DNA from: Phallusia mammillata
Taxonomy: Eukaryota
NCBI GenBank assembly: GCA_965637545.1
Contig: OZ281496.1
Location: 29,202,001-29,266,000, forward strand
Length of the DNA: 64,000 nucleotides
Reading direction: 5' to 3'
A model generated the notes under the pieces. The model did not search any database. It saw only the letters and a list, made by a program, of their open reading frames with translations, and was not told the origin of the DNA. A program made the translations under genes and the position numbers. Shown here in pieces: positions 110 through 55,482 of the stretch (positions within the stretch are counted from its first letter, which is position 1; each line of letters opens with the position of its first letter).

Positions 110-3100
110 CTGAACAACACACAGTTTGACGACATCTTTGCTTGGTATTTCTTGATCAATTGCGTTTGTGATTAGATTCAACTCAAATCTACGTTCTTCG
201 GTGTCTTTGAGAAGTTGATTATCCTCTCCGTGGCTTAAGATGACACAAATAAAACACAGGTCGCTGTCCAGGACGTTTTGACATTCTGCAAACATGTTTT
301 TATTAACCGTTAATATTTGACGATGTTTGAGACAAGGCCGCATTTGCAAACAAAATGGAGGACATATTACAAAGCGTTTTGTATATAAGAGTCGTCCTGA
401 CGAAATCTTTCGAAGGACATGCCCACATGATCTCTTCCAATTGTATTTGAAAATATTTCATATTACTGAAAGTGAACCCAACTCTATTGCGAAAAAACTT
501 GTTGCGACATGCGTTTTGTACATAGAGTCCCCCTGGCGAATTCTTTCGAAGGACATGCCCACATGATCTGTTCTAATTATGTATTTTAAAAGATTCCGTG
601 TAAGTAAAAGTGAACCCAACTATATTGCGAAAAACTTGTTGCGAAATACATTTAACTAATCCCCACCTTTTCACAAACGCACTCTATCATCAAATCAGCG
701 CACGTAAACTTTGGTCGGAAGGTTATAAACGAGCATAGTTGTGTTTTGTTCACCTGATCTTAAGCTTTTTATCATTTTGTCATAAGCTTGATTTTCAATC
801 ACATGACATTGCATGTTGAGATTTTCTGCAAGCTCCTGTAAACGTTCTACGTCTTTTTGGCTTCCATGCCGATCTTTAGAAACCAGGTATTTCTAAACAG
901 ATGTTAGTCACTTTGGGAGAAAAGCATGTGGCTTTGTGAACCTTTTTTGCAATAAAGTAGTCTATATTGCAGTGACTCTCTTTGATATTGTTTTCAAATC
1001 CGACCCAACAAATAATACTCAATCGTATAACAAATCACACCTTTGGCTAGTCTTTAACAGATAAGGGAACTTTTGTACATTTAGTGTTGTCTTTTAAATA
1101 TCAAGCTGTCTTAAAACTCTAAGACATGGACACGTTTTTTCCCAATGTACTACACATAAGTAACATACAGTATGAGGCTTCGCAATTCGTTTTTATTACT
1201 TTAGTACCCTCATAAAACCGTTTTAACGCAATTGGATAATCGAATGCCGGCCAAGCGAAGTACGGATTAGCAAGAAAGTATGCAATGTCAGTTACCAGTT
1301 CACACCCCACTTTATTTGTATCGAAAATTGCAAAAAAATGCAACGACTTTTAGTACCTCATTGTTAATAATAACCATCCTTCCCATTCCATCTCTTAACC
1401 ACCAGCTCTTCAAAATGCTGAAACAAACAGCTTAGTAAATTGTTTTGGTATTATCTTGATGTGTTGGGCACCTTTTGGATGGGAACTTCGACCAGATAGT
1501 TTCGGCAACGCAGCAAGGCAACTTTTGGTTTGAATTCGACCGTCCCGAAATCCACTTTAGAAAATTGTGACGAGCAATACGGCGATAGTCACTAAAATTG
1601 CAGAAAGGAAATGGTTTATTAAATATTTATCGCAACGCTGCGCGAAGCAGACGATTGCAACTAACTCGTTTGAGAGTTCTCATGGTAGCTTTATAGTGGA
1701 TTGTATGGTATGTCCTTAGAATTACTACTTTTTACCGTATTCATATCAATGGTTAGCCAAAAGTTATGCTATACTTTTTCATAGTCAAACTCAGTGTTTT
1801 TTTACAATAATCACTGTTTTAGGGCATAATGGTCATCGTGCGTCGCTAAAAACTGTTGTGAATCGTCAAAACATAAAACAGTTTGTATAAGGCATAAACT
1901 TGGCCAAATCGTCCAGGGCATCTCACCCTTATAAGTTACAGACATAAAGAAGGAAAGACGGGCAAAATGCAGACTTAAAATATTTACAACAACTGAGTAA
2001 GCTTCAAACATTCAAACAATAAACAAAATGTCTTACTCCTTGGTCAGCTCTGTTTTCCGCTGCTCATTGTCACTGTCTGATACAAACAGATAAACTTCAT
2101 TGAGACATAGATTCTGGAAGATTTGATGCTGCGTAATGCAAGTTATCTCCTGTTCAGCACCAAGTTGCTGCGAAATTTCTTCTACACTTTTGCAACACAA
2201 CTTGTGTTCATCAAACTGATCGCAATTACCACACAAACACCTGTAACACACAGCAAATAAATGCACAGAAAATATGTACTAAAAAGTTTAAATATAATGT
2301 TGACAATAGAGCAACCATTATATCATTTGAGACTTAAATTTGTTAAAGCAAATCAGCATGAAAATTATAATCAGAAATATCGTTGTTGTCCGTGATTGAT
2401 TAAAGTCTACAAGGGTATACAGCTCATTATACACGGGACCAACCTAGTTGCCATTGGATCAATTTAAATTCAAATCTATAATGAGACAATTTAGCACAAA
2501 AATCCAACCTGAAATTTAGTTGTAGTAATCCCATACTGGAGTCTAATCTGTACATGGTTATACAGTTAAAAACCAATTTTCTATGTATATGAAGCAGGAT
2601 CCCATAGCGATTTTACTATTAATCAGTGGTGGCATAGTGATATTAGCTTTGTTCTATGTCTTCCATAGAGCTATAGTGAGTACTTGGTGCAATGTTATGT
2701 GGTCAGTATAGATTTCTAATCAAGCCGTTGCTTGACTGTGCCTTGTGTTTATGGCCCTCGTAAAAGTGTTTGCGTAAACAATCTTTGTCACGTGTGTGGT
2801 CTACTGTACACTATTCAAACCTTTCAGGTGGAAACTCAGTTTCTATGCGTTCCTCGACACAGCAGGGCAAGCTTTTGTCGAGATTTCGTTTCCAAATCCA
2901 TTTCACGAAATTGCTGTGGGCAATGCGGCGATAATCACTAAAATAAAGAAGAGGGATGAAAAAAATCGAGAAGCGAACACAGCGTTTTATTATGTATTTT
3001 ATTACAGATGTTTTCAATGTATACATCAATGTAACAAATAAATATAATCAACATAGTATCTTAATCTGAGGTTGTAACGCCCTGGGCCTGTCAATCAGAC

Positions 3101-4099
3101 TTTCGGGCCTAAACGGGCTTTTCAAAAACGATTCGGGTTCGGGCCTGGCTCGGGCTCCAATTTCAGACCCGTTTACAACTCTGGTCCATTTATTCTGCAT
3201 AAAGGATGTAATGCTGAAATCGTTTTTATCATTTTATATCTTGATTTACTTCCTCTTATTCATGATTATTCTATGTTCTTAATAGCGAAATCGATATAAA
3301 CAAGAGTTTACAACAGTATATATACAGACTGATTCAAGTGAGCTGTTACAGCTGTGATACGTTCATTCATTAGGATTGAAAAGTAGCAGTTTCAGAAATG
3401 GCATTGGGCCACTTCATGTGAGAAGTGGTTATTGATTTCAAATGCGGGCCAACAACAAAAGGTCTAGAATTACTTGATCGAAAACAAGCTATTGTTAAAG
3501 ACTACCTCTAGACTTACTCGTTTGTAATCTCACACTCATTTTGATTATTGTTGCAGCAACTGGCAACAGACACGGCAAGAACAGCCCTTTTGAGGCACAC
3601 ATATTCGAAGTCAGCGTGGTGTGTTATGCAATCAAGGTTTGTTTTTGTTGCGATTTCTTCGGAGCTTTTGCAACAGAACTTGTTTGCTTCCAAATGGCTG
3701 CACTGTCCACAGATACACCTGCTAAAATCGTGCAAATCGTAACCTATGTCCCGAGAGTTTTGTGCATGGTTAAACCAAGTTATCAGGTCAGTAGAACAGA
3801 TACGTTAAATCCATACTTTGAAACTTTACAAGGTTTGGCTAGATTTGGAAACAACAGATAAACATAGTACATGCAAACAGGTTAAAGCTCAAAGAGGTTT
3901 GCTTAGATTTGGAAACAACACATAAACATGGGACATGGCCACAGCAAACAGCTTAAAGAATAGCAAATACATTCAGCCGCCTTATAAAATAGGGGCAATA
4001 TAATTACCTTTTAGCTTGGTCGTTAGCTACTTCATCCGAAACTTGGGCACTCCCTGTATGAGCTACGTTCAAATTCGATTCTTCTTCACTGTCACTCAT
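110..4099 (-). CDS. Gene A: double-ballast caspase family member, 5' part (continues off the left edge)
   Basis: Exons 4099-4008, 3721-3518, 2937-2821, 2240-2037, 1591-1472, 1417-1357, 892-754, 285-110 have GT-AG ends and compatible phases with no stop. Translation: MSDSEEESNL..., ballast 1 (CICGQC..FCC..CITHH..CL / YRRIAHSNFVKWI..LPCCV..IETEFP), ballast 2 (CLCGNC..LCC..CITQH / LPCCVAETIWSKFP), then caspase p20 (GRMVIINNE, DRHGSQKD, CVILSHG, KLCVVQ|). The ACRG exon would lie left of base 1. Confidence 0.87.
402..645. repeat. Imperfect direct duplication (~107 bp x2) in gene A intron
   Basis: TCTTTCGAAGGACATGCCCACATGATCT...AAAGTGAACCCAACT.TATTGCGAAAAA.CTTGTTGCGA occurs at ~402-508 and ~538-645. 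Confidence 0.85.
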
Positions 4100-7924: not shown

Positions 7925-10900
7925 CTATTTTCCATCCTTGGAAAACAAGACTTCACTTCTCAGCTGGGTTTGGGTCCATGGGACAGGATGTTTTTGATCT
8001 GTCATTTTTCGTCTCACCTTGGTCAGTATCTGATCGTAATGAATATTTACGAAAAAAAACGACAAAAATGGATATTTTTGGCGTTTAATTGAAAATGAAA
8101 ACATCGTTTACATCATTTATTGCTTTCAATACATTTTAATGTAATTCTACTAAAATGTCAAAAAGGTCAGTTTTACGCTGCCACAGTAAACAAACCTTGA
8201 ATAGATCGTAATGATCTTGGTCTTGGTCGTTGGTCACACAATGAAGCAGAGCATCGTAAAACGCAGAAATTCCCTTCTGTTTCTTGTTGTCCCTGAAATC
8301 TATACAAAAAAATCTTTAATGTTAACAAAGTTAACTTAAATTTACGAATAACATTAATGGCCGAATGCGAAAACAGGAATTGTCATTCGTCGTTAAGATT
8401 TTGAAATATAAATATATTTCACATTACCAGCTTTATGTGAAGACTTACGTCAGTCACTGCTGCGCCCTTTTTTATCTATCGTTTTTACGCAAAAGTGGAT
8501 ATAAATGAGTAACTGATGATGAGCATTTGCCGAAACGCTTAAGCAAAACAGCACTTTGTACGTCTACTTGGGCCGTTATTATTATCATTGAAGTCATGAA
8601 CGGATGCGTATGTAGTGTTCCAAATGATTCAAAGTTTTTTTTAAAAAAAAAACAACAACAACAACAACATATCAATAGCTACAAGATTCATTATAGTCTT
8701 TATCCACAAGGCAAGTAGTTGGGTGATTGTATTTTTAAGTTTGAAGTACAAGTGTTGTTAACTTATCTAAACAAGTAACAGAAGAATTATTTACATATTT
8801 TTTGCTGGTTCTGAAATTACGGCAAAAACGTTTAATGAATAAAAATAAATGAAAACCGTAGATACCTTCTTCAGAGAAGGTGATCATCACATCAGCGTCT
8901 GGGTGTTGAGGTAAATACCTATCTCCGTTTGATCCAATCGCGTCAGTTTCCACCACCGGAGGCTTCTATTGAAAAAGTATTTGTCAGCTCAATTGTCTGA
9001 AATAAAGTCCAACCTTTCATGGGTGTATCGCTGATAACATGTGCACCCTTTTTTGTAACAACATACCTTTTTCCAATGAAATAAATTTCTTATTTTATGT
9101 ATTAAACTTTTTTGCCATGAGAAAAAGAAGTTTGCCGCTTTTTAGCAAATAGGTAATCTTCTCTTTAAAAATTTTTACCTGTACGAAAAACAGTTTTGGC
9201 TGCCCTTTCAATGCGTCAGCAGGGCTTCTGCCATCGACCGAATCTTCACGAAACAGAGTTGTAATCTCTTTTAAGTTAAAACTGTCGTTGACATAGTTCA
9301 GATCGAATTTGTCCTTCGACTTTGTTTCAGATCTAATGGCGCACACGAAGCATGATATTGCGGTGAAGCCTCTCACATCTGCGAAATATATTTCCTTACA
9401 ATTTGTATGTAAACCTGTTCTTCGACAAGTAGGAAATAATTTATGCCGGTCTAATTTGTGTCATAGACTGCGAATAAATGTGATAAAGTGATTAAGACAT
9501 ACAAAGTAAAAATGTGTTGTCGTAATGAAATAAATCATTTTTATAAATACCAATTAAACATTTGCTCATGCAAAGGATGTTTTCAAAACTTATTTTGATA
9601 GTTTAGAATAATACGTATATCACCGACTTCGACCAGGTTGAAAAGTCTAGAATTAAAAAAAATACTTACAGCTCTCAATCTTGTTTAGTAAATCCACTTT
9701 ATTAAACTTAAATGTTTTAGTTTCTTGTCTGAGTTCAGAACATGGAGTTTTGATGTTGCTTTCTTTAAACCCCCACAACTTGGCCACGAGTCGGAGGGCG
9801 TTGATGTCTTCTTGAAATTTTCCCTTAACAATACAAACACAGTAACTGTTGAAAAACGTTTGGTAATGTAAAGTCAGATGGTTGGAATTAGTATACCTTG
9901 TGGCACAAATATTAAAACACCAGCATTAAATTACCTGATCCGCTACAATTACGAAAAGGCCACCCCTTTTCATATCTGTACTGTAAGTGGAAGGCCTGTT
10001 TAAGAAAAACAGTTAAAAGGTGCTGCTATTATTAGTACATTCAAGAAAACGCACGGAACAGTTTCAATTGTTGTTTTTAACTTGAGATGCAGTTCTTTTG
10101 TCAAGCGAGTTGTGCTGGAAGCTAACAATCTGTGCGGTTCGTTTTCGCGTTGTTCCATGTTGCGTTTCATGGCGGTTAGAGCCTATTCACCAGAAATATC
10201 ACGTACAAAAGACAATTTAAAACCAAAAGAAAGGAAATAACCTGCATGATTTCCAAGCCGTGTGATTGATTGAAACTTTTGCACAACTCATCAATAAATG
10301 GTGTACCCTTTGTTCGGTTACGAGTTCCTGCGTGACCTTAAAAATGTTTTGTACGTTTTAAACTCGGTTCTGTGTGACAAACTTACTTTTGACTTCTTTG
10401 TCGTATTTTGGTAATTGTTGTAATTACTACGCAATGGTAAAAAATCTCACTTAATAAAGCTCACCATAAACTGAGCAGTATGTGATCAAAAAGTTTTCAT
10501 CTCCCGGATCTTCGACATGTGACACATCCTCGTTTCTTACTGTAAAATTGTCTCCTCTACACGCCTAGGACATACACAACTTGGTTGTTAAATTATTTTC
10601 AAAAATTACTCGCATGGAACTGTTATTTGTTTGGACAAAGCTGATTTGCCACTATTTTAAGTTGGGTATCAATGCAAAACTTTTGTTTTACCGCATTTAT
10701 GTTTCAAAGCATTATTAAACCAAAGTAAATTAGGTTAAGCCTTTTTCATTGCAAACCATATCTGTTTTTTTCAATTTTGAATGCCCTCATTACTTGTTCA
10801 TGAAACATTTTAAACGAAATAAGGGATTTTTTTGATCAACCCATCCTTCGAATACTTACGTAACCAACATGTCAAAATTTACCTGCACAAAACACAGTTT

Positions 10901-13170
10901 TACCACATCTTTATGTACTATTTCTTTGTTTATTGTCGCTGTAATCCAGTTTAACTTGAATTTGTCTCCCTTGACATCTTCAAGAGTATGATTTTTTGCC
11001 CCATGGCTCAAAATGACACAGATAAAGCAAAGATCGCTGTGAATGACGTTTCTACACTCTGCAAATAGCAGATTATTAAGTTATTTATAAGAACCAAGCA
11101 TAAAAAAATAGACTGTTCTGCGTAAAAAATATTAAATAAGTCACGTTAAACCTGATCGCAGACGTGTAATGATGTCATCATAACCCTTGTTTTCAATCAC
11201 ACGACATTGGATGTTGAGATTGTCTGCAAGCTCCTTCAAACGTTCCACGTCTTTTTCACTCCCATGCCTATCATTTGATGCCAGGTATCTCTAATATACA
11301 TGGGAATCTTTGATTGATATGCGTTTTTAAATCTCTGCCAGCATTTCACGTTGTTTCTACTTATAACTAAAAAGTGTAAAATAGTTTTTTTTGTTAAATC
11401 TATACCTCGTTGTTAATGATAACCATAGTCCCAATTCCATCTCTCAACCAGTCGCTTTTTGAAATGCTAAAAAAACACCGCTTGGTAAAATTCTGAGTAA
11501 TTGACTTATTGTCACTCCAAACCTTTCAGATGGAAACTCTGACCAAATTTTTTCGAGTACACAGCAGGGCAACTTTTCGTTTGAATCGGTTTGTCCCCAA
11601 ATCCATCTCACAAAATTACGACGGGCAATACGGAGATAGTCACTAAATTGTAAAAAAATACGAGGTGCTTCGCTACTCTGCAAACTAAGTGTAAATTAAT
11701 GTAACTATAAATTTAGATGAGAATAAAAGAACTATTTTGAATCATTGATATCAACTACTTGGGTTCAGGCCCTTGAGATTACAGAAGTCGATAAAAGAGT
11801 AGCGGAACAAAATCGTTTGTACTGTCTTATTTGGCAATCTCGTGCATATGCAAGTTTTCTGTTGACATACTCATTTGTTAACTCTGTTTTGCGCTTTTCA
11901 TTGCCACTGCCACATGTAAAGAGATACACTTTTTTGAGGCAAAGATTCTTGAAGACGTCGTGCTGCGTAATGCATTCAAACTTCTCAAGTTGTTGTGAAA
12001 TTGCATCGACGTCATTGCAACATACAATTCGCTCGTATACGATGCACTGTCCACAAAGACATCTTCAATTTGCAATAAAATAGTTTAAGTGAACATAAAT
12101 CAATTAACAACTAATATGAAAGTTTAAGATGTTGTGACACCGACTGGCTGAGACAATAAAGAAACGCAGAAATTTAAAAAAAAATATAATTATAAAACCA
12201 TCACATGGTTCATTGTTTATTCCGGCCTCTGTGATTTACTCGTTAATCCTATAGGAACATCTGTAGTGTTGACACAATCGTGTATACCCAGTTTTCTGAT
12301 CCTTAAAAAGACCCGGGAATTACTTGTCTTTGTACAAGTTAGTATTTGATTCAAATTAAGTTCGTATATTTTCACAAACCTTCCAGGAAACGTTGAACCA
12401 ATGCTTTTTGTAACACAGGAAGGCAAATATCTGCGTTTCCCAATCCATTTTTGAAAATTGCTGTAAGCAATACGGCGATACTCGCTAAAAATGAGGATGG
12501 GTTAAAAAAGTTCAACGATAAATGACCAAACTTTTCTACTGTAGGCAGTCCCCATATATGAGTTTATTTTTGACGGAAATGTTTTAATGTCAAACTTACA
12601 TTGCTAAAGTAAACAGGATAAATGTATTTTGTTTGACTAACATTAAAAATCTTGTACCATCAACTTGAATTAGTTATATGTTTACTTACTCGTTCCCTAT
12701 CTCTTTGCTCTGACCATCGTTGTTTGTAACCTCCCTTGTCACGCTAAGAACATCTTTATTGAGACATACAGCTTTGAAATTAGTATGTTGTGTTATGCAC
12801 TCCGACCCCGATTTTGTTGAAATTTCCTCATCGTGTTTGCAGCACAACTTGTTTTTGTCATCAGTATTGCATTGCCCGCATGAGCACCTGTACAGATAAG
12901 TAATCCAATTTAACTAAATTTCCTCGCATAGTGGGAAAAAATGAGCTAATGGCAAGCTTCTTAACGAAAGCACCCATGGGCTACGGGTGTTTCAATACCA
13001 GAGCAATAATATGAATAATGACATCGAAAGAAACACAGGAAAGCTTATTACAAGGCATATACAAGTTATACTTACCAACTGGTTTGATCAAAAGTGGTTT
13101 CATCTAAAACCTGAACACATGTTGTTTGCTCGACATGCAAAGTGGATTCTACTTCCATGGAGTCACTCAT
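7925..13170 (-). CDS. Gene B: complete 17-exon ballast-ballast-caspase-pseudocaspase protein, 705 aa
   Basis: Exons 13170-13076, 12887-12690, 12484-12380, 12062-11871, 11642-11523, 11466-11406, 11290-11152, 11058-10883, 10564-10465, 10336-10242, 10182-10055, 9980-9935, 9823-9670, 9378-9179, 8965-8866, 8299-8196, 8029-7925. All GT-AG; total 2118 nt, open to TAG. Motifs: WCSCGQC..KLCC..CITQH..LPSCV; GTMVIINNE, DRHGSEKD, CVILSHG, FVQ|ACRG, GTRNRTKGTPFIDELC; second domain GLFVIVADQ, CAIRSE (no His), GQPKLFFVQ|KPP (no Cys), PWTQTQLR. Confidence 0.92.
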
Positions 13171-15500: not shown

Positions 15501-18500
15501 CTATTCTCTATACTTGGAAAACAAGACCTCACCCCTCAGTTGGGTTTGGGTCCATGGAACGGAATGGTTTCGATCTGTCATTTCTCTTCTCACTTTTGTC
15601 AGAATCTAATTATACAGAGTCAGTTAATTTTAACAATAGCGAAGCAAGATACATATTCTTCTGCAAGATAAATGTTGCATTTTAACAAAATGTCAAAGGT
15701 TGAAGTGAAATGATCACAAACCTTGAATAGATCATATTGTTCTAGGTGTTGGTCGTTCCTCACACATTGAAGCAGAGCGTCGTAAAACGCAGATATACCA
15801 GTTGCTTTCTTTTTGTCTTTAAAACCTAAACGATACAACAAACACAATCTTATAAAAGAAAACAATGTCGTTGCTGTGTATATTTGCAAAATTATTTCGT
15901 GGCTGAAAGTTTTAATTTTTGACGAACTAGCAGATTTACAAATAAGTTTTCAAACCTGCTTTCGAAAACGTAATCATTACATCGGCGTCTGGGTGTGGCA
16001 AAAAATCATCTGCGTTTGTTCCAATCGCGTCTGTCTCTACCCACGATGATTGTTTCTAAGAGAACAAACAAATTTCGTTACTATTGTTTGAATTCAATTA
16101 CAGTAGAACTAATAACCCTACCTGTACAAAGAACAACTTCGGTTGCCCTCGCAAGGCTTTTGCTGGGCTCATATTCTCGTCGCAGGCGGAATCGCTGCCG
16201 CGAAACAAAGTTGTAAGTTCCTTCAGGTCAAAAGTGTCGTTTCCACAATTCAGTTTGAACTTCCCGCTGGCGTTTTCGTCTGATATAATGGCGCAAACGA
16301 AACATGATATTGCCCCAAATTCTCTCACGTCTGGAAAATGTGCCGAAAATCCCGAAAATTAGGACCTATTTCAAACTTTTTCTGTTTTATCTATTTTCTT
16401 GGAATTAAAGTTAACATTTTGTTTTCCGTTAATTATAAATTAAACAAAAAGTTGAAAGATCAGAAGCCAAAAGTGAAGTGCACTCACAATCAACAATCTT
16501 GTTAAGCAAATGCACTTTACTCAGAGCTTCCGAGCATGGAGTTTTAATGTTGTTTTTGTCAAATCCCCACAACTTAGCCACTTGTTGAAGTGAGCGGATG
16601 TCTTCTTCAAATTTGTCCTTGAAACACATATGCGGCATGCTTTGAAAAATGCACACTGTCTATTGTGAAATTGTGTTTTCAAAACAATTACCGTGGCTGT
16701 TGTTGGCCGTAGAATACGAAGAATAGAAACAAAATATACAACAACTAACGTTATGTTACCTGCTGACCAACAATCACGAAAAGACCACCCTTTTTCATAT
16801 GTTGCCCGTAAAGCGCGGGTCTAAACAAAAAACAAACAAACAATTAACTGCTTATTTTATTTTTATGTACAACTATACGAACGGTATTGTCACATTGCTT
16901 GTTTTCAAAACGAGAGGTAGTTCTCTGGTCAAACGTGTTGTACTGGAAGCTAACATTCTGTATTCGTGCATGTTGTACTTCACGGCCGTTACAGCCTAAA
17001 GGAAAAGACCAGAAAAGATTTTTTTCCGAATTGAAACCAACGGACGGAAAGCCATAATACCTGCATGATTTCCAAACCGTGTGATTGATTAAACCTCTCG
17101 CACAACTCGGTAATAAATGGTGATCCTTTCTCAATATCACGATATCCCACGTGACCTTACAAACATACAACCGCTATTAAAGAGTATTGAACTTTTTATA
17201 CACATTTATTTAAACGAATAATATTACGATGTAATGTGGATAAAAAAGCAGAAATGTGCATACATTAAAACTAACCGTAAACTGAGCAATATGTGATCAA
17301 AAAGTTTTCTTTTGCAGGATCTTTAACATGAAATATGTCCTTGTTTTCCACCACATGCCTGTTTCCTCTACATGCCTAATAACAAGATGGCATTGGTAAC
17401 GGGTAACAGATAACGGTAACAGATAATCCCTAGAAATTCACCTGTACAAAACACAACTTCATTACGTCTTTGTATCTTATTTCTTTATGCATTGCTTTAA
17501 TGATCAAGTTTAACTTGAATTTTTTCCCTTTGATATCTAAAAGCGTATGATTTTTTCCTCCGTGGCTTAAGATGACGCATATAAAGCACAAGTCGCTCTT
17601 GATGACGTTTTTACATTCTGCGAACCACAAAATAGATTAATCATTAACAAACTCTAATTTTCTAATTTCAAAGCAAGGTCTGATGCAAATTGGAACAGCA
17701 GTTAAACACCTACATCTCAATATTTTCAGGGTAATATTTATCAAAATTAAATAGAAAACTTAGTTTGTATACCAAAACTTAAACTTGTCATGATGTCATC
17801 GTAACATTTATCCTTAATTACACGACATTGCAGATTGAGATTGTCCGCGAGTTGTTGCAAACGTTCCACATCTCTTTGACTTCCTTTTCGTTCGTCCATA
17901 TTTTCGTATGCCTAAAATAATGGGTACTTTGTACAAACACTTGATACGTGAGTTTTGCCATGTGATTTGTTGTACCAAAGTGTTTTATTGTCTTAAACCT
18001 ATTCATAACTTCCCGACTCTTAACTAAACAAATTTTGAAAGAGTTTTTATGCTTCTATTGCGTTTACCTCATTGTTAATGATAACCATGGTTCCGATTCC
18101 ATCTCTTAACCACCCACTCATCGAAATGCTATGACGAGATTATTGATAAAATAATTTGGTATTCACAAAACATCATTCACAAACCTTTCAGACTTGAACT
18201 CTAACCAAATAGCATCGAGTACACAGCAGGGCAGCTTATGGTTTGAATCAGTTCGTTCCCAAATCCACTTTACGAAATTGCGACGGGCAATACGTAGATA
18301 GTCACTAAATCATTCAAAAGTGATTAAATATGTGTCCATGTGTGGTACACACGGCTAACTGTTACATCGCCATCTTCTATTTAACTAGGTATGGGTGCAA
18401 CGCCATTTATTGGGCCGTTGGCAGAAGCTTGACTATATCGTCTACCGAGTTTTTTCTTATACTTACTCATTTTTTAGATCTGTTTTTCGTTGGTGATTGG

Positions 18501-19869
18501 TGTTGTCAGATACAAAAATAAATTCCTTATCCAGACAAAGATCTCGAAACCTATGATGCTGCGTAATACAGCTAACCTCCGAGTTGGCAAGATGACTTGA
18601 AATTGCAGTCACCGCTTTGCAACACAGCTTACGTAAGTCAAACTGGTTGCAATGACCGCAAGAGCAACTGTAATGTGCAGAAAGTAAATCAAGTAAAAAA
18701 TAAGTGAGCAATAAATGCTGGCCCTGATGCTGTGTTAAAGTTTTAACGTATATGCTACGAATGTAGACCTTGGTTTTAATGTAATTTTACAAATTTAGTG
18801 CGTATAATTTATCTCAGCTTAACAGACTAATTGGTTGTCTACACGATGTATTCTGTATACACCACTACCTTGGCACTAATGTTTATGATTAAACTAATTG
18901 GTTGTAGACACATAACTATTTTGCCACACAAGCGACATACAGCGTGTTAAATCAAACCTTTCAGGAAACTTTGACTCAATACGTTTTTCGACACAGCAAG
19001 GCAACGCTTTGTTCACATTTGTTTGTTTCCAAATCCATTTTGCGAATTGGCTGTGAGCTATGCGACGATATTCACTGCAATTTAAAAAAGGCATGAAAAT
19101 CCAGTGACATAAAATATATTAAAATTTTCCAGTTTGTTTCGTTTAATGGTATCAATCATCTTCCAAAAGCTATATATTTTGAATAAAAAGATTCGTTTTA
19201 ATTCTATATGTGGAAAATAAGTTTGCCATCATATTTTAGAAGTGATCTCCAAACATACTCATTCGTTCTCTCCGTTTTGTGTTGGTTATTGCTGCTACTC
19301 ATGCCAGATATGAAAAGAACTGCTTTGTTGAGGCACACAGGTTCGAAGTCTGCATGGTGGGTTATGCACTGAAGTCCCGATGTTGCTTTAATCTCGTTCA
19401 CGCTTTTGCAACACACCATATTTTTCTCAGAATGAACGCATGCCCCACACAAACACCTCCTGCAAGAGTAGTATTAAATTCAACTAATTAAATAAACAAG
19501 GATAATTTAGTAAATCACTACTAGAAACTTATCTAAAGCGTTATTCTCGTTTATTCAAGAAACAATTTGCAAATGAGTCCCTATTTCGGATCATGGTTAT
19601 AAGGGATCACATGGATACATAATTTGCAACAGTTTTTAGGTTTCATTTTTGTATATTACATGCCTATAAAACGATAACGCCTCACTTTGCACAGCGTAAT
19701 TTTTTTTAAATAACATCTAGAAATCTTCTTGTGTATGTTGCGAAGCCTAACAAAAAGAAACTACAAAATACCACCCAGCCCGATCGTCAGTGCTGTCATC
19801 CGAAACTTGGGCACTTCCTGTCTGTGCGACGTTCATATAAGACTCTTCTTCTTCTTCGCTGTCAGACAT
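15501..19869 (-). CDS. Gene C: complete 17-exon ballast-ballast-caspase-pseudocaspase protein, ~709 aa
   Basis: Exons 19869-19772 (or -19775), 19459-19259, 19074-18958, 18667-18467, 18304-18185, 18128-18068, 17911-17773, 17617-17442, 17375-17276, 17155-17061, 16995-16883, 16820-16760, 16617-16488, 16330-16122, 16055-15956, 15825-15722, 15605-15501. Phases match gene B; open to TAG. ERKGSQRD, CVILSHG, FVQ|ACRG, GYRDIEKGSPFI; dead domain CAIISD, FFVQ|KQS, VETDA, PWTQTQLR. Confidence 0.92.
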
Positions 19870-22800
19870 ACTCATTATAACCTACCTTTTATGCACATAA
19901 GATTGAAACTTTGCGGATCGTCCTAGAATAAATACGAGTTTAGCAAACAGGTAAAGCCGTTTTAAAATCTTTCAGTCTTCCTAACAAACTTTAGCGTACC
20001 AAAAAATCTCATTGGAATCTTGCTGGCATGTATACTCCAGTTAAAGTTTGATGTTGCGATCTTGACAGCAAAGCGAATGTCGTTTGGCGTACTTGTTTGT
20101 TGTACTGCTGCTACCTTAACTTTCTGTAAGCTACATTAAACATTGCCTTTTGTGACAACATCACGGGACATTCTCTGTCTGAAGCCTTTGTGTGAGAAGG
20201 TCGTGTATTTGGTAATGATCTTTTATGCTTTGTTTGGAATTACACCCCCTCAACCAAACGTGTTTGTTTTTAGTTCATTTACATTCACATTTCAATTGCC
20301 TCGCTCTCGGCTTATGACTTTTTGGCCTTTTGTACTTCATGCCTTTGTTTGCAGACATTACCAACAATCCACAGGTGTTTGCTTTGGAAAGTCCTCTGTG
20401 TTTTGCAAAGTGCAATGGCCTAAAAAATTAGCTAGTGCGCAAAACCCAAAAGTATCTTAATTAATTTTAAATGCTATCTTTGGGTATGAAGACTTTAGAT
20501 TTGCACACCAATTACAGTAGGTCATGCACAGGTTAATTTGAAAAGCAAATGGTTTCGTGCAGGGTTGTGCGTGATCTGTGACTTTAAGTTGGGTAATTCT
20601 TTCCGTAAATTTTGATTACTGTACCAAGTGCGTATAGGCTGTTATTCCGTTTGACTCTCTATGTCACGGACACTATTTGACAGTAAAATTTTACTCTAAA
20701 TAAGATTGCACTCTTGCTACACCCACAAAAGTACTTCGAGTACCACAGTTTTTGAACGGCGCTGCGTTGGGGTTAGTAAGCTGTATGGCCTTGCGTAGTT
20801 TGTTGACCCCTGCTCTGTTTCGCCTCAAAGGGTCGCATGCGCTGTGTGTGTTACGCACAATGATTATTTGTCGTCAACACGCTTCTACAAATATGATTTT
20901 TTATTTTCTGTTTTTGTTTTGACACGTTGCTTAGGTTTAGATGCAAGATAAACAAATTGATGGCAAAATAAACAGGAGACTTTCTGTGATATCCATTACA
21001 AATTGAAAAAAATGCACTTTACTCAGTGTTAAAAACGGCTACACGTCTACTTGTTAAATCGTAACTAAATAAAGCATAACTGACACATTTGCAATAAGCA
21101 TGGACGCCAAGAGGGGGGAAGATTTGACAAATTACATGGATAAATTACGATATTATGTAATTGTGTACATTTATAAAATTATACAGCGCACTGGCGTTGC
21201 CTAAAACTAAATAACTCGACAATGTAAAAAACACGTTATCACGAGTAGCTCTTTTGTCTGTCCGATGCCCTCTATTGCCCTAACGTGCTAGCGCCCATGA
21301 AACCTTTGGAGACTATGTATCCGAAGTTAACAAACACAACAACAGAAGTTTTCCACACAGATTATGTATATTTACAAACAATACATTAACATTTTTTTTA
21401 CTTGAAGAAATATATAGATGAAAACACAAATCACGGACCAGTTTGTAAAATAGCAAAGACACATGTCTAAAACGTTTTCTTCTTATATGATAACTAAATC
21501 AAAGCAAAACTAACATGTTTGCAAAGCACATGAACCTGTAGAGATTAAAGAGTATTTTACAAATTACGGGCATACCAACCGACTTTTTATACAGATTAGA
21601 ATTTTACAAGCCTTACAAACATCAACAAATTTTACTTGTGGATAAAAACTTATATCAAGGCAAAATAGCGAAGACTACATGTCTACAAAAACTGTTCAAT
21701 GTCAGTACAATGCATAAAATCTATCGGTTTTGGTTTTGGCCGTAGTTGATTTTTGCCTATTGTTACACCTTGTAGCAATTTAGACAGCCTTAGGCTTGTC
21801 AAAACAAACTTCTTTCCTCAGCTGGGTTTGGGTCCACGGAACCGGTTGTTCTTGATCTGCCATTCTCTTTCTCACTTGTGTTAGTATCTGTTCATGAGGA
21901 CCACAAAGACGGCGTAAAAATAGTGCAGTCGTGAAAACAGAATTTATCTTAGTTTCGTTTGTTGGAAAAGCTTTCATTATGTTTAGGAAGCGTCAAGATT
22001 ATTATGAAAGATTTTTAGATAATCAAAATTTGTACGCAAACCTTGAATAGATTGTAATAATCCGGGTGTTGGTCGTTGGTCACACAATGAAGAAGAGCGT
22101 CATAAAAAGCAGTTATCTTTTTTCCTGTCTGTTTGTCAACCAAACCTAAACGATACATAAACAAAATAGTAAAACAGTTACACAATTTTAGTCGGACAGG
22201 ACTAGGGTGCGCTAAAAACCACGGAGCAAATCGGCAAACTTATTAAAACTTTTGTTTTGCGGTTTTTTTTTACTTTACACTAAATCGCACTTTCGATTCG
22301 CATAATTGTATGAACAAACGTAACACACCTCCTTGGGAGAGGGTGATCATAACATCAGCGTCTGGGTGATGAGGTAAATAATCGTTTGCGTCTGATCCAG
22401 ACGCATCAGCCTCCACGAAAAATGGTAGTTTCTGAAGATATTTTAATTCGGTTATTTGCTTTTGTGAAGGTTATTCTGTCCCCCGCTGATATGGTTCCAA
22501 TTTTGAATTTCAGGTTAATTTGCCTTAAATATAGAAATCTTTTTGTTCAGCATTTGCGCGTATAATACTTTTGTTACAAGCTTTTTGTTGTTTTACAAGC
22601 TTTAAATGTTGTCTGGTAATATATTAGATAACAATTTTACAGCTAAGATCACCAAGACAGTTTAACCAGATGATAGATGTTTTATTATCAGACAACCAGT
22701 TATGTTATAACTACACAAAAAGACGATTATAAAATTAAGTGACATAGCTTCATACCGAATGCAGAAAAAAAACATAATCAGCTTTGACCGAGACCAGCAC

Positions 22801-25857: not shown

Positions 25858-28800
25858 TACAAAGTAACTACTTTTTGAGAAAAAAAACTTTGTTTTAGCA
25901 AGATCTTGGTTAAGAAACCTTGCCGTATGTACTTTTGTTCAGGTGCTCAAATTGACTCTAAAAGTGCCTTACCCATGCTAATGCGTAACGCACAAATGTT
26001 TCGCTATTTTGTTTTCTTCTTTCCAAATTAGGATTCTTGTATTTTGTTTTTTTATGGTGTTTTATTATCCACATGGCAAAAAAATGTATGTGAATTAATT
26101 TGATAAAATACTTACAATCGACAATCTTGTTCATTAAACTTGTTTTCGTCAACTTAAAATTCCCACGATGCGCTTCTTCTCTCAGTTCCAAGCAGGGTGT
26201 TTTAATGTTGTTTTCCTCGAAGCCCCACAATTTAGCAATTTGTTGAAGGGCAACAATGTCTTCACTAAATTTGTTCTATAGTGTAATTACGAGTTTTTGA
26301 TATTATTTTTCATTATCTTTTGAAGTGTAAACATAAAGCTGACACGAACTTATGGCCTAACAGCTTTTATTAATATTAAACCATCTAAAAATACCCCAAA
26401 ACTAATGTTAACTTGCCTGGTCACCAACAATCAAAAAAAGACCTCCTAGTCTCGTGGAACCATCGTAAACTTCAGGTCTGTTTTTTAATGACAATAATTT
26501 ATTTAGTGCTATTATCTGTGGAACACATAACTTACGGAATAAACGTTTCATTCGCGTTTGAAAGCAAGTGCACTTCGTTGGTTAATCGTGTTGTGGTGGA
26601 AGCCAAATATCCGTATTCGTCGCGGCGTTGCTCTATTTTGAGTTTCATTGCTGTTACAACCTTAAAAAAAACAGTTTTCAACATTTTCATTAACTCACAT
26701 TTGAACAATGAATGTGGGTGGTGGAAGTGCACCGGCATTTTGTCTTTGGCAATTGCTCCATTACCTGCATAAGTTCCAGGCCTTGTGTTGTATAAAAACA
26801 ATGGCACAAATCAATAATGAACGGCGTTCCTTCCTCAGGATAGCGATACCCATAGTGACCTTGCAAACATAGTGCACGTTTATAAAGTTCGTTCTTTGTT
26901 ACAAATTATACACGTTTAACTGCTTCATTTATGCTATGTATTGACACTCGACAAAGCTATTTTAACCGATTAATCTCACCATATACTGAACAGAATGTAA
27001 TCAAAAAGTTTTGGTATCTTCGATGTGAAACACATCCTCGTTTTCTAAAGTGTGATTTTCTCCCCTGCATGCCTTTAAAACAGGTTTATTCGTAAAAATG
27101 CTTGACTTTGCCCAAGGCTTGCACGCTTGTCAAAAATATCCTTACCTGTACAAAGAGCAATTTGGTGATATCTTTGTTTGGTATTTTCTCGTTTATAGCA
27201 TTAGTGATCCAATTTAACTTAAAAAAATTATTGTACTTATCGACAACAATATGATTTTCCTTTCCATGGCTCAAGATGACACAAACAAAGTACTGGTCGC
27301 TGCCAATAACTTTTTCGCATTCTGTACACAACAAACGAATAATAACGGTAAATGTGAGCATAAATACGCTGATTTACAAAATTATTCTGCAGGCCAGAGT
27401 TTTAAGTCGAACCTCTAATACAGACAGGATTCAAAGATGTTTAAAAATACGACTCAGTGACCTCGGCAAATGTCGCCAGGCGCCAGGTTATTTGAATTAT
27501 TGGCTGTCATATAACCTGATCTCAAGCTTTTCATGATATTCTCATAGGGCTCATTTTCGATGACACAGCAATGCAAGTTGAGATTGTCCGCAAGCTTTTG
27601 TAAACGTTTTACGTCTTTTTGACTTCCGGTTCTGTCTGTGTATGGTGCCAAGTATTTCTAAAAGCAAATTTATATTTTGAACCAGTGCTAAAATCAATGA
27701 ACGTGTTGTTGAATATTCTATATTTTACTTAAACCAAATAGATATAATCATTTGTATTTGTAAATACATACCTCGTTGCTGATGATGACCATCGTTCCAT
27801 TTTTCTCTCCCAACCACCAACTCCATGACAAACTAAAAGCATTATTCGGAAATTTTCAAGCCGTTGGTAGTTTTTAGCGAAAATATAGGATAATTTTAAA
27901 TCAATATTATTCATGGTTTGCTTTTGACTATTCGCGCTGTGTATCAAAAAGCAAGTTTTCTTCGATAGATCTTATACTGAATGCGATTTTAGTTTTTTCC
28001 ACCTTATGGTTTGATGATATTCACAAACCTTTCATAGGAGAACTGTAATTGAATAGTTTTGGCAACACAGCAGGGCAAGTTTTTTTTTGCATCTGTTTGT
28101 CCCGCAATCCATTTCACAAACCAGCGACGGGAAATGCGGCAAAGGTCACTGAAACCATAATGAAAGTCAGTAGGCGTGTCACATAGTCTTGCAGCAATGC
28201 CAAACTCAGCAAAAAATGTCAAGGATGGTGTTCCACACATGAAACCGGTAATGTTCATTTATTTTGTATTTAAACTTGAAAACTGTTTTTTTTAACTCAT
28301 GCTGCATTTACTGGATTTTGGTTTCAAAATATATATATATAAACTCTTGAAGCCAGACTTACGCATTTGTCGTCTCAGTTTTTTCCTGGTCAGTTTTTTT
28401 TTTCAGTTCCAGTAATACTCAGTACATCTTTATTAAGGCACATAGCCCTGAAAACTTGGTGCTCCGTTATGCAGTCCACATCCACATCCTCTAGCTGTAT
28501 TAAAATATCCCTGTCGTGTTTGCAGCATCTCTTACATTCTTCAATTCCGATGCACTGTTGGCACGAACACCTGCATTTAGGTGGTCAAAAAATAACCTTT
28601 TCTCATTTTCAGAGCAACAAATTGCAAATATAAGCACTAATTTTGAGTGTAAATATATAAATCTCAACCGCAGTGTTATCGTAAAACAGCCACGATAAGG
28701 AAATACGTGTTGCTATAATATTAACGATAAATGTTTATTGTCTTCATAAAACAGTTTTTGCAACGTTTTTCGCACACTACAAGTCTGCAAAATTATATCG

Positions 28801-30683: not shown

Positions 30684-30794
30684 TCAAACTGGATAAGGTT
30701 TGTCAAAACAAACTTGTTTCCTCAACTGGGTGTGGGTCCATGGAGCGAGGTGTTTTTCTTCGGTCATTTTGTTTCGAAGTTTTGAATTTAGTAT
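30684..30794 (-). pseudogene. Fragment H: orphan terminal exon of the caspase family
   Basis: Translates to ..LRNKMTEEKHLAPWTHTQLRKQVCFDKPYPV*, homologous to the last exon of D/G (PWTQTQLRKEVCFDKPKAV*). No upstream caspase exons nearby. Confidence 0.78.
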
Positions 30795-37500: not shown

Positions 37501-40500
37501 AACTCCAAAGATTTTGGTGCTTAAATCAAGCTGATGTTGGGTACAATCGTTTTGCCTAAACTTAAAATTACCTGGATACAGAAATGTCCAACAACGTTTT
37601 TGTCTTTACTTTTTCTTCGAAACTCTGCAACGAAGCTGCTCAATCTGAACTTTTTTCCTTTGACACTAGTAAACCGGTTTTCCCGACCATGGCTCAAAAT
37701 CGCGCAAACAAAATAACGATCATGTATATTTAGGTCTCTGCATGCTGTAAACAAAATACGGTTATTTGTAAATGATTTTCGTCAAAAACTTGCAGATTAT
37801 TTAGCGTTTTTTCCCGGCAATTATGGGTCCCCTTCCCTGAAGGGGACACATATTGATTTTACTCGAATTTGATTGTTTTTGTTCGTATTTGTTCTTGTTT
37901 GTTATTTCCCAAAGTTTGTCCGACCCGTTTGTCCATCACACGTTTGATGGATTTGGACGAAATTTACACAGATAGTAGATATAGTTATGTAGATGTGCAT
38001 ACCACTTTGTTTGTCCTGATAACCCCAGTATTTACCCCGCTAGCCACCTAAAATGACTGGGTTTGTAAACAGTGTCGGAATTGGCTGGAATTTGAACAGC
38101 TTGTGGAGTTGTTGCTCAAAACACCTCTCGGCCGGGTTGTTGCTCAAAACACCTCTAGTATTCGAAATTTTAAACAAGGAAGAAAAATTTAAATATTGGC
38201 AGATTGGGAACTTGGCCGAATGGCCCGGCGCGCCTGACCCATATACAGACATAGAAAACCCTGATCGGGATTCGTCCCCGGGAGAGTCCTGGATTCGGAC
38301 TCCGTGAATAAAAAATTTATGCACTGGCAGATTGGGCTGAAATTTTGCATTTTTTAGTTTAGTGTCAAACCCCATTAGTTACACTACTAGCCCCCCCCAA
38401 AAATGGCTAAGTTTATAAAACAGTGTCGGAATCGTGTGGGGACTATGGTTATCTCTTGAAATACACTATTTTTAACTTTACATGTGTGGGAACCCATGAG
38501 TTTGTGCCTGCAGAAACAACTAAGGTTATAAAAGACGATGGCTAATATGGGACCCAATACAAAATAATCAAAGGAAATATGTTTATGTTTTAAAATAGGT
38601 TATAGTGTATGTGCAAGGGCAATATGTGCTAAGCCACCCTTCGAGTTAGCTTTCGTCTTGACTTTTTTTGTCTGTATTGTCTCGTTTTTTTTCCGGTAAT
38701 TAGCTTTTGATTACTACACGTTACCTTACCATTCTCAAATTGAGTTTCAATTTCTTCCACATTTTCGTCATTAATCACTGAACTTTCCATTTGAAGATTT
38801 TGAGCCAAATCTATTAACTTTTTAACATCTTCTTGGGTTCCATGGCGTTCCTTTCCTTTTTTGTCGTAAATCTGTACAAATCTCAAAATATAACTTTAAG
38901 AAACTTGTTATCAACTAAACATTTAAAAGCGTTTGATTTAAGTATAATCGGTAGGTAAATACAACAACAAAGGGTGATCGACGGTTTAAGTTAAATTGAC
39001 GTAAACACGACGTCTACCTTTGTACATTTGTAAACATACCTCGTTGTTGATGATGACCATGATTCCCAACCTCCCAGTCAACCACGGATCACAGTTCCGA
39101 CTAAAAGATATTGAATCAAAACCTTTCCAAAAGTCTACTTAGAATTAATAGCTTCTAACCACTATTTAAATCCTTAATCTATTTATGTCATACATTTACT
39201 ACTATTTATGTCATACAAAGTGGAACACTAAACAAACCAAATACCACACTTTGTTTGATATGATTGTTTTGCCACTATGCCGTCTACATTCTATAACAAC
39301 TATGCTAAGCTTCACCGCGACAATTTGTCTTTTGGATTTTATGTCCAACAACAAATTATTGAATGAGTCACGCAGACTTTTGCCAAGTAAACGATTTGAT
39401 AAGGTCTTAAGCAAGTGGTTGTAATTTAAAGGAAGAATCCAGATTTATTATCAACAAATTTTGTCAGGTTACGGATCGGATCAAGAACCAAAGCTTTTAG
39501 GGATAGAAAGCGGAGATATTTAACATTTAGCGACAGAACGTTATCGCACTTATCCAGTGGAAACTTGTTTATGATCGAGTCAACAGCACAACAAGGCAAA
39601 ATTTTGTTCTCCCCAGGGAAACCGCTTTTTTCCCATATCCATTTCATGAAGTTTATCCGAGCTGTTCGACGATACTTTCTGGATGAAAGAAACGAATAAG
39701 TTATGCACCTTGTATCACAAAGTAACAATTAATCTGTTCGCGTCGCGAAGTAATGTAAGCATATACCTTTTAAATCTTATGCATTCGACAAGCTCAGTTG
39801 TTAGAGCCAATCAAATAACGGCAATTATGCCGTTAAAAAGGTTTTGGCAAAACTTACAAGGGAGGACTGTTGAAATTCCTACCTCTTTCTTTTTTCTGTT
39901 AGACATTCGTCTTTATAATTGCCAAATACGAAAAAAGAAGTTGCGTCAAGGCAGAGGTTTTCAAATGTTTTATGATTGGTAATACATTCGTTTTTTTGAC
40001 GCAATTTCTCTTTGACTTCTGGGTACGATTGGCAACATTTTGTTGGATAGTTGACAAATTCAGTGCATTCTCCACACGAACACCTGTAAAAATGTTACCA
40101 TCGGGTTATTACTGAATTCTATGCGTGTCCCGTCCGGTTTGCCAAAATGTCCCGGAGTTTGGTCTCCCACCAAAACTATATTATTAACGTGTATGTCTCT
40201 GTTTATTGCTTAGTTTGCTATTTTAAAATAAGCAGTATTGTTAGTATAAATGTAAGTTGATTAAATATTGGCAATATTTTCGAAATTCTACATTTCACAA
40301 ATGTTTGCTCTTCCCAGCGGAAGAGGCTATAATTGCATTATATACAGCTTTTCGGGGACGAAGTCTGAAAGTTATAACTGTATCTAAAACTTTTCGGTCT
40401 TACTTTTTTTCTTCTCCAAACAGCTGAGCTATACGAAAAATTAGACTCATTTGGTGGCTGTTATAAACGTGCTTGTCCTGGTTGTGTGGTTGTTTGAATG

Positions 40501-55025: not shown

Positions 55026-55393
55026 TTTCTGCTGCCGTTTTATTGACATTTAGCCTCTTTCGTTCGCTTTTCTTCTTTTGTTTCCTATTATTCTCGTCTA
55101 TCCTTTATCTGAAAATACGTTTATTTCTCGTATGGTGACACGACAAAGGACAGTTTTCAGTTTTTTTCAGTTTTCCGGACTGTCGTCTAATTGTCGTAAA
55201 ATAATAATAATAAAAAAAGAGCAAATGCTTCTGCCTCAAAATTTGCCTTTGTTGTTTGCAGTTTAGAGACTGACGATGCCTGCATTGGCAAAATATCTCT
55301 CTTAATATTTAACAACTTTGTGTGAGCTGATTTGGAGTCAGAAGTATTTGCTTCTTTATTATCAAAGACTGTTGTACATGACTATACAATTAC

Positions 55394-55482
55394 CTTAAAC
55401 TAGTCGTAATATTCTTGATGCCTATCAGATGCAACACATTGAAGCAACGCTTCATAAAATGCAGATATACCTTCTCTGGATG
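55394..55482 (-). pseudogene. Fragment F': partial penultimate exon of an F-type copy with nonsense codon
   Basis: GISAFYEALLQCVASDRHQEYYD*FK|GT versus gene F GISAFYDALLQCVASDGHQEYYDLFK. Confidence 0.8.

What the first reader, a model, noticed from the sequence alone, without database searches (positions are those of the whole stretch)
7925..11466. Active and dead caspase domains covalently linked: a single-chain caspase-8/cFLIP-like pair
Seen: domain 1 has R(H/K/T)G(S/T)..D, LSHG, QACRG and the p10 arginine (GTR/GYR/AFR). Domain 2 replaces SHG with SE/SD and QAC with QK(P/Q/L/S) in B, C, D, E, F and G, and lacks the first arginine. Only about 15-25 residues separate the domains. Established: caspases work as dimers, and cFLIP-L is a dead paralog that heterodimerises with caspase-8 and can activate or restrain it. 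Inference: domain 2 is a built-in dimer partner that either removes the need for induced dimerisation or holds the enzyme off until cleaved.
Basis: partly seen in the sequence, partly recalled or inferred. Interest (0 to 1): 0.85.

Follow-up and report, generated by a model that had tools for sequence, protein, structure and literature searches.

The report
Fused live-and-dead caspase in a sea squirt
One sea-squirt gene most likely encodes a working caspase joined by a short linker to a second, conserved but catalytically dead caspase domain, an arrangement already described in the opposite order in corals (caspase-X), so it is a new variant rather than a new principle.

Summary
On the minus strand, 12 GT-AG exons (11466 to 7925) give one open frame of 473 residues.

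- **Domain 1** has RHGSxxD, SHG, QACRG and GTR.
- **Domain 2** follows about 20 residues later. It has SE for SHG and QKPPV for QACRG, and lacks the first arginine.

Domain 2 is a real caspase fold: profile comparison with domain 1 gives 94% probability (E 1e-7). Its only database relative, a Phallusia mammillata "caspase-7" fragment, passes the Pfam caspase threshold.

The two domains share all five intron positions and phases, so domain 2 arose by duplication of the six-exon module. It is kept by selection: dN/dS is 0.21, against 0.17 for domain 1. Its most conserved part is the C-terminal region that I assign to helix alpha5 and strand beta6, the caspase dimer interface.

The link between the domains is inferred, not seen in RNA. 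A short junction intron of the same phase is kept in paralogues B, C, D and E, and D and E have no ATG from which domain 2 could start alone. One spliced RNA contig joins domain-2 exons 3 to 5 but does not reach the junction.

The built-in dimer partner reading is plausible but untested, because the two-domain chain could not be folded. Coral caspase-X (2016) is a published precedent with the order reversed.

The parts
11406..11466 (-). Domain 1 exon 1 (..DWLRDGIGTMVIINNE; strand beta1). It starts in phase 1, so it is spliced to an upstream prodomain exon.
11152..11290 (-). Domain 1 exon 2, holding the first S1-pocket arginine (DRHGSEKD)
   Evidence: (weak Peptidase_C14 match)
10883..11058 (-). 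Domain 1 exon 3, holding the catalytic His (ILSHG) and ending ..KLCFVQ
   Evidence: profile matches caspase-6/7/8/3 at the His site, E 5e-5
10465..10564 (-). Domain 1 exon 4: ACRG (catalytic Cys) and a short intersubunit linker (..VRNEDVSHVEDPGD..)
10242..10336 (-). Domain 1 exon 5: start of the small subunit with the second arginine (HAGTRNRTKGTPFIDELC)
10055..10182 (-). Domain 1 exon 6: the last helix and strand (..LLASSTTRLTKELHL) plus the first half of the linker (KLKTTIETVP). It ends in phase 2 at the donor CC|GTGCGT.
9996..10054 (-). The 59-nt junction intron between the two domains. If it is retained, the frame stops after 17 further codons (TAA at about 10003).
   Evidence: The same phase-2/phase-1 junction is seen in C, D and E. 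Its splicing was not seen in RNA.
9935..9995 (-). Domain 2 exon 1 (PSTYSTDMKRGGLFVIVADQ): second half of the linker and strand beta1
9670..9823 (-). Domain 2 exon 2 (GKFQEDINALRLVAKLWGF..). The loop holding the first arginine is deleted.
9179..9378 (-). Domain 2 exon 3: AIRSE in place of ILSHG, ending ..GQPKLFFVQ
   Evidence: (aligns with caspase-3 residues 112-161). The splice to the next exon is seen in RNA.
8866..8965 (-). Domain 2 exon 4: KPPVV in place of ACRG, then VETD|A with an Asp that is invariant across the copies, then ..HPDADVMITFSEE
   Evidence: Both of its splice junctions are seen in an RNA contig.
8196..8299 (-). Domain 2 exon 5 (DFRDNKKQKGISAFYDALL..DLFK)
7925..8029 (-). Domain 2 exon 6 (ILTKVRRKM..VPWTQTQLRSEVLFSKDGK, stop). 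It aligns to the alpha5/beta6 region and is the most conserved exon of domain 2.
11523..12887 (-). Upstream prodomain exons of the same gene (context only): two cysteine-rich repeats resembling the P2X7 intracellular domain
   Evidence: (P2RX7_C, E 0.009 and 0.018, below the Pfam cut-off)

Best explanation
Gene B most likely encodes one chain, one of a tandem family in an ascidian genome (a Phallusia-like sea squirt). The chain has a cysteine-rich prodomain, a catalytically competent caspase domain (D1), a spacer of about 20 residues, and a catalytically dead caspase domain (D2).

[quoted passage not shown] It then lost the His, the Cys and the first S1 arginine, but it has been kept by selection as strongly as D1.

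My inferred mechanism is that D2 supplies the second half of the obligatory caspase dimer through its conserved last helix and strand (alpha5/beta6). This would give a single-chain pseudo-heterodimer with one active site. Control would then shift from induced dimerisation to proteolysis, with the invariant Asp in D2's own intersubunit linker (VETD|A in B and C) as one candidate site, and to whatever the prodomain senses.

**Shown:** the exon model, the motifs, D2's homology to caspases, the module duplication, purifying selection, and splicing of D2 exons 3-5.

**Inferred:** splicing across the D1-D2 junction, D1-D2 pairing, and whether D2 activates or restrains D1.
For: - **One frame:** one open 473-aa frame over 12 GT-AG exons. 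The same 12-exon structure and phases are intact in paralogues C and E.
- **Junction:** a phase-2 donor and a phase-1 acceptor are kept in B, C, D and E, with introns of 58-126 nt (59 nt in B). Another 59-nt intron lies in the same gene. D2 exon 1 of D and E has no ATG, and a Tyr upstream of the Met of B and C is conserved in all four copies.
- **Duplication:** D1 and D2 have the same phase series (1,0,2,0,2,0), and their introns fall at aligned positions.
- **D2 is a caspase fold:** hhalign of D1 against D2 profiles gives 94% probability, E 1.2e-7, over 182 columns. The Phallusia fragment P0001, 76% identical to B-D2, scores 25.9 bits against Peptidase_C14, above the 21.4 cut-off. Atlas structure matches are caspase-7-like, TM 0.74.
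- **Selection:** dN/dS for B against C is 0.17 for D1 and 0.21 for D2.
- **Interface conservation:** D2 exons 5-6 have 50-53% invariant columns, against 30-35% for its other exons. PWTQTQLR is invariant in seven copies.
- **RNA:** a spliced contig joins 9179|8965 and 8866|8299.
- **Precedent:** coral caspase-X has two caspase domains in one cDNA-verified chain. It was modelled as a beta6-beta6 pair on the cFLIP/caspase-8 structure 3H11, and removing the dead domain increased killing (PMC4715348).
Against: - No RNA read or contig crosses the D1-D2 junction. Three of the four runs laid gave nothing on this gene.
- Tunicates have trans-spliced operons, and the junction intron holds in-frame stops and AATAAA-like strings in C and D. 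D1-only products are therefore possible.
- No full-length protein of this architecture was found in the protein collections. The tools' length limits and the 66-aa query make that a weak negative.
- Part of the 20-residue spacer looks like the canonical lead-in to beta1, so the free linker may be only about 10-13 residues. Whether that can reach an intramolecular beta6-beta6 arrangement was not computed.
- The assignment of the conserved C-terminal segments to alpha5/beta6 rests on alignment with caspase-3 recalled from memory and on Pfam profile positions, not on a structure.
Confidence: 0.55

Rival explanations
1. The chain is fused as described, but D2 does not pair with its own D1. Either D1 of one chain pairs with D2 of another, giving head-to-tail dimers or filaments seeded by the prodomain, or D2 acts as a scaffold or decoy that binds other proteins.
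For: The free linker may be as short as 10-13 residues. The prodomain repeats suggest oligomerisation or sensing. D2 carries an invariant Asp in its linker, which could serve as a decoy or substrate site.
Against: The strongest conservation in D2 lies in the segments aligned to the dimer-interface helix and strand. That fits pairing with a caspase domain, but it does not separate cis pairing from trans pairing. The coral precedent was modelled in cis.
Confidence: 0.25
2. D1 and D2 are mostly made as separate products from one locus. Possible routes are a D1-only messenger ending in the retained junction intron, a D2 messenger trans-spliced at the acceptor at 9995, or an isoform that skips the six D1 exons, which is in frame because both modules start in phase 1. 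The products would then pair in trans, like caspase-8 and cFLIP.
For: B and C have an ATG 13 codons into D2 exon 1. The junction introns contain in-frame stops, and those of C and D contain AATAAA. The organism appears to be a tunicate. Other first-stage notes on this genome suspect trans-spliced operons, but these are unchecked. P0001 is a D2-only fragment in the Phallusia transcript set.
Against: D2 exon 1 of E and D has no ATG, and the first Met of E's D2 lies after beta1 and alpha1. The donor position and phase are conserved even in the distant copy E, which separate cistrons would not require. P0001 starts inside exon 3 and looks 5'-truncated.
Confidence: 0.15
3. D2 is a decaying relic of a duplication with no function.
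For: The catalytic residues are lost. D1 and D2 are only 21% identical. Truncated or broken copies exist in D, F and loose exon relics.
Against: D2 has intact frames in B, C, E, F and G. Its dN/dS of 0.21 is close to D1's 0.17. Long invariant motifs are shared with the Phallusia protein.
Confidence: 0.03

Closest known systems
Coral caspase-X (Acropora millepora AmCaspase Xa-Xd; Moya et al. 2016, PMC4715348)
   Same: It has two Peptidase_C14 domains in one chain, one lacking His and Cys. It was interpreted and modelled as an intramolecular cFLIP/caspase-8-like beta6-beta6 pair, and it belongs to a lineage-specific multigene family.
   Different: The domain order is reversed: in the coral the dead domain is N-terminal, here it is C-terminal. 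The coral inter-domain region is long and predicted to be disordered, whereas here it is about 20 residues. This protein has a P2X7-C-like cysteine-rich prodomain, and the host is a chordate (tunicate). Common descent was not tested; an independent origin by duplication of the local six-exon module is likely.
Vertebrate cFLIP-L / caspase-8 heterodimer (PDB 3H11, as cited in PMC4715348)
   Same: An active caspase is paired with a dead paralogue that arose by tandem duplication. The dead partner keeps an Asp cleavage site in its own intersubunit linker. cFLIP-L cleavage at Asp376 is stated from established knowledge and was not tested here.
   Different: cFLIP-L and caspase-8 are two separate polypeptides recruited by death-effector domains. 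Here there are no such domains, the link is covalent, and the weak matches to solved structures are to caspases-6/7/3.
Separase pseudo-protease domain plus active protease domain
   Same: A dead caspase-like domain sits next to the active one in the same chain and supports it. This is from general knowledge and was not tested here.
   Different: It belongs to a different clan CD family (C50), has the pseudo domain first, and shows no detectable sequence relationship.

Membership tests
Caspases (Peptidase C14A), domain 1 | Catalytic His in an SHG motif and catalytic Cys in a QACxG motif | tested here: met
   ILSHG and QACRG are present in B, C and E. The exon profile matches caspase-6/7/8/3 at the His site, E 5e-5.
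Caspases (Peptidase C14A), domain 1 | S1-pocket arginines (RxGxxxD in the large subunit; xxR at the start of the small subunit) | tested here: met
   RHGSEKD and GTR in B, with equivalents in A-E.
Caspases (Peptidase C14A), domain 1 | Score above the Pfam Peptidase_C14 gathering threshold | tested here: inconclusive
   Only single exons could be submitted. They scored 15.3 and 12.9 bits against a cut-off of 21.4.
Caspase fold, domain 2 (pseudo-caspase) | Homology to Peptidase_C14 across the whole domain | tested here: met
   hhalign against D1: 94% probability, E 1.2e-7, 182 columns. P0001 scores 25.9 bits against PF00656, above 21.4. Intron positions are identical to those of D1.
Caspase fold, domain 2 (pseudo-caspase) | Catalytic dyad | tested here: not met
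   His is replaced by Glu or Asp, and Cys by Pro, Gln, Leu, Ser or Asp, in all six window copies.
cFLIP (CFLAR) | Tandem death-effector domains ahead of the pseudo-caspase domain, on a separate polypeptide from the active caspase | tested here: not met
   The upstream exons are P2RX7_C-like cysteine-rich repeats. D2 follows D1 in the same frame.
Coral caspase-X | Two caspase domains in one chain | tested here: inconclusive
   Met by the gene model and paralogue comparison. The junction was not seen in RNA.
Coral caspase-X | Order: inactive domain first, active domain second | tested here: not met
   Here the active domain comes first. In the coral the inactive domain comes first.
Coral caspase-X | Common descent with the Acropora proteins | not tested
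   No coral sequence could be fetched with the tools available.

The most novel reading that the evidence does not exclude
A chordate lineage independently built a single-chain caspase heterodimer from a symmetric six-exon module. Because both modules start in phase 1 and the junction intron carries stops, one gene could produce three in-frame products: prodomain-D1-D2, prodomain-D1 (junction intron retained) and prodomain-D2 (D1 exons skipped). The last would be a cFLIP-like protein. Splicing would then set the active-to-dead ratio in a ballast-domain-triggered death or immune pathway.
Probability: 0.25. Interest if true: 0.7.

Novelty: new variant of a known kind. Interest (0 to 1): 0.5.

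Why it matters
Caspase activation depends on dimerisation, and dead paralogues such as cFLIP tune it. A second, probably independent covalent fusion of an active and a dead caspase domain, with the opposite order to coral caspase-X, would suggest that evolution reaches this solution repeatedly. It occurs in the sister group of vertebrates and has a very short linker.

It also offers a compact natural construct for asking whether a tethered dead partner activates or restrains the live domain. The family is expanded in tandem and carries an unusual cysteine-rich prodomain, which points to a lineage-specific death or immune function that has not been described in the ascidian caspase literature I could search.

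Tried and rejected
- **Pfam on single exons**: the pieces were too short, giving only sub-threshold Peptidase_C14 matches.
- **Search of 1.84 billion representative proteins with D2 exon 3**: it found only P0001 and one chance bacterial repeat protein, P0002.
- **Exact look-up of P0001's contig**: not on record.
- **The search for homologous proteins with P0001**: it found only itself. The length window of 86-273 aa excludes full-length relatives, so this says little.
- **PDB search with P0001 or with D1 exon 3 alone**: no hits. A five-copy exon profile did work.
- **RNA**: no run on record as RNA holds the stretch. Four candidate runs were laid and only one 187-nt contig matched. The junction is not covered.
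- **Search for D1 exons upstream of copy F**: none found, and F is a truncated duplicate.
- **Literature** on tandem or pseudo-caspases in ascidians, and on P2RX7_C with caspases: nothing beyond coral caspase-X.
- **Not run:** structure prediction of the two-domain chain. The spliced protein has no reference, long sequences may not be typed, and no database protein with both domains was available.
- **Rejected:** D2 as a decaying relic.
- **Rejected:** a recent internal duplication. D1 and D2 are only 21% identical, while D2 copies are 44-66% identical to each other, so the duplication predates the family's expansion.
Full report
**What is there.** The window is AT-rich eukaryotic DNA (GC about 0.36) with no long bacterial-type ORFs in the region. 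Reading the minus strand, I built a 12-exon model running from 11466 to 7925. Every exon has an AG acceptor, every exon but the last has a GT donor, and the introns are 59-566 nt. The model translates into a single open frame of 473 residues ending at TAG, whose last base is 7925. The first base of the first exon completes a codon, so the gene continues upstream. There, conserved exons encode two cysteine-rich repeats with weak P2RX7_C similarity, as another first-stage note says (s1-399080).

**The observation.** Domain 1 (D1, six exons) carries DRHGSEKD, ILSHG, QACRG and GTR. Domain 2 (D2, six exons) has AIRSE where D1 has ILSHG and QKPPV where D1 has QACRG.
- The profile alignment shows an 8-residue deletion in D2 where the first arginine should be.
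- The same pattern holds in the other copies on this strand. These are C (18128-15501), D (27832-21780), E (39100-34590), F (58103-56514, D2 only) and G (from 63693, D2 only because the window ends). Copy A has only D1 in the window.
The one exception is E, which has QVD rather than QK-.
- The spacer between the KELHL-like end of D1 and the GGLF start of D2 is 20 residues in all four complete copies.

**Is D2 really a caspase domain?** Pairwise BLAST between D1 and D2 is barely significant (E 0.003). Other evidence is stronger.
- A profile-profile comparison of the D1 and D2 alignments gives 94% probability and E 1.2e-7 over 182 columns. It places SE under SHG and QKPPV under QACRG.
- D2 exon 3 alone aligns with caspase-3 residues 112-161, ending at KPKLFIIQ (weak, E 0.07-1).
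- The only database relative is P0001, a 156-aa Phallusia mammillata entry named caspase-7 (CAB3227933.1). It is 76% identical to B's D2.
- P0001 passes the Pfam Peptidase_C14 threshold at 25.9 bits against 21.4. In the ESM Atlas it looks like caspase-7 and caspase-8, with feature score 0.95 and TM 0.74.
- D1's exon-3 profile matches caspases-6, -7, -8 and -3 at the catalytic His.

**Origin.** D1 and D2 have the same number of exons, similar exon lengths (61/61, 139/154, 176/200, 100/100, 95/104, 128/105) and the same phase series (1,0,2,0,2,0). In the profile alignment all five internal introns fall at corresponding positions. D2 is therefore a duplicate of the whole six-exon module. Because the module starts and ends in the same phase, it can be duplicated in frame. 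D2 copies are 44-66% identical to each other but only about 21% identical to D1, so the duplication predates the expansion of the family.

**Is D2 maintained?** Yes.
- Between B and C, dN/dS is 0.17 for D1 and 0.21 for D2. Comparisons with E are saturated at synonymous sites but show the same low non-synonymous divergence.
- D2's last two exons have 50-53% invariant columns among B, C and E, against 30-35% for its other exons.
- AFYDALL, FKILT.VR and PWTQTQLR are invariant in seven sequences, including the Phallusia protein.
- By alignment with caspase-3 (sequence recalled from memory) and by Pfam profile positions 113-231, these segments are the last helices and strand beta6. PMC4715348 names alpha5 and beta6 as the cFLIP/caspase-8 interface.
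- An Asp in D2's would-be intersubunit linker is invariant: VETD|A in B and C, VEAD|A in D, VVAD|V in F and VQSD|A in P0001. In E and G it is followed by Pro. This fits note s1-399246.

**Are the two domains one chain?** This is the weak point.

*Evidence for one chain:*
- The donor after the codon fragment CC (AG in E) and the acceptor before a single completing base are at the same place and phase in B, C, D and E. The junction introns are 59, 62, 58 and 126 nt.
- Gene B has another 59-nt intron, so the size is normal for this gene.
- D2 exon 1 has no ATG in D or E. In E the first Met lies well inside the domain.
- A Tyr about 10 residues before GGLF is conserved in all four copies, upstream of the Met seen in B and C. 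That region therefore looks coding.

*Evidence against, or missing:*
- The organism is evidently a tunicate, a group with spliced-leader operons. This is general knowledge; other first-stage notes on this genome suspect such operons but are unchecked.
- Retaining the junction intron stops the frame within 0-19 codons, and the introns of C and D contain AATAAA.
- The only RNA evidence obtained is one 187-nt spliced contig from run X4. It joins 9179|8965 and 8866|8299, with GT..AG on the minus strand. This shows that D2 exons 3-5 are in processed RNA, but it does not reach the junction.

I put the fused product at about 0.85. D1-only or D2-only isoforms remain possible additions.

**Mechanism.** Shown: an intact caspase domain is followed by a conserved dead caspase domain. 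The rest is inferred from caspase biology and from the coral precedent.
- D2 would occupy the partner position of the caspase dimer, giving a one-active-site pseudo-heterodimer.
- Regulation would then rest on cleavage, with the invariant Asp in D2's linker as a candidate site, and on the prodomain.
- In coral caspase-X, deleting the dead domain increased cell killing, which favours a restraining role there. cFLIP-L can do either.
- I could not fold the two-domain chain. There is no reference for a spliced protein and no database protein with both domains.
- Part of the 20-residue spacer (Y..D....GL.I.I) resembles the canonical lead-in to beta1 of caspase-3 (recalled from memory, a lead only). 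The free linker may therefore be about 10-13 residues. Whether that allows cis pairing is open, and head-to-tail pairing between chains is the main rival.

**Comparison and novelty.** The closest known case is coral caspase-X (PMC4715348). It has the same idea and the same published interpretation, but the opposite order, a long linker, a different prodomain and a cnidarian host. Its authors noted that multi-caspase-domain predictions in databases were unverified. I found no report of such an architecture in ascidians. The protein is not a member of the cFLIP family, because it has no death-effector domains and is not a separate chain. I rate it a new variant of a known kind, of moderate interest.

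**Limits.**
D's frameshift is only described.

Noticed in passing
window 26980-27078 (copy D, QACRG exon): Copy D reads ACRGENHTLENEDVFHIED in one frame and NFLITFCSVYG in another. This is a 1-nt frameshift at an A run, so D is either a pseudogene or a homopolymer assembly error. D also has a GC donor after D2 exon 1 (about 26417) and a 3-kb intron (26116 to 23082).
   Followed up: partly
window 55527-58127 (copy F): F holds only D2 exons 2-6 with open frames. No D1 exons or D2 exon 1 lie upstream as far as 61500. F is about 88% identical in nucleotides, introns and 3' flank included, to the 3' half of D (20798-22456, 26106-26299). It is a truncated segmental duplicate, possibly a D2-only gene or a relic.
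   Followed up: partly
window 30699-30785 and 55385-55477: These are isolated relics resembling D2 exon 6 (..APWTHTQLRKQVCFDK) and D2 exon 5 (with an in-frame stop). No neighbouring exons were detected.
   Followed up: no
P0001 residues 1-5 (Phallusia mammillata CAB3227933.1): The database fragment starts MSHSN at the place where the window copies have (I/R/L)S(E/D). That paralogue's dead domain may therefore still carry the His while lacking the Cys (QKLPS). The entry looks 5'-truncated.
   Followed up: no
window 11523-12913; also 18178-19458, 1438-3720, 28031-28572, 39558-40094: The prodomain exons are cysteine-rich (RCxCGxC..CC..CITxH..F..CL, then F(S)(D/E)YRRIA..F.KWI..LPCCV) and match P2RX7_C only weakly. 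Copies A, B and C have two such repeats, while D and E show one.
   Followed up: partly
window 8866-8965 and the equivalent exon in C, D, E, F, G: An Asp in the would-be intersubunit linker of the dead domain is invariant in all seven sequences (VETD|A, VEAD|A, VVAD|V, VQSD|A; followed by Pro in E and G). The Asp residues in D1's own linker are not conserved in E.
   Followed up: partly
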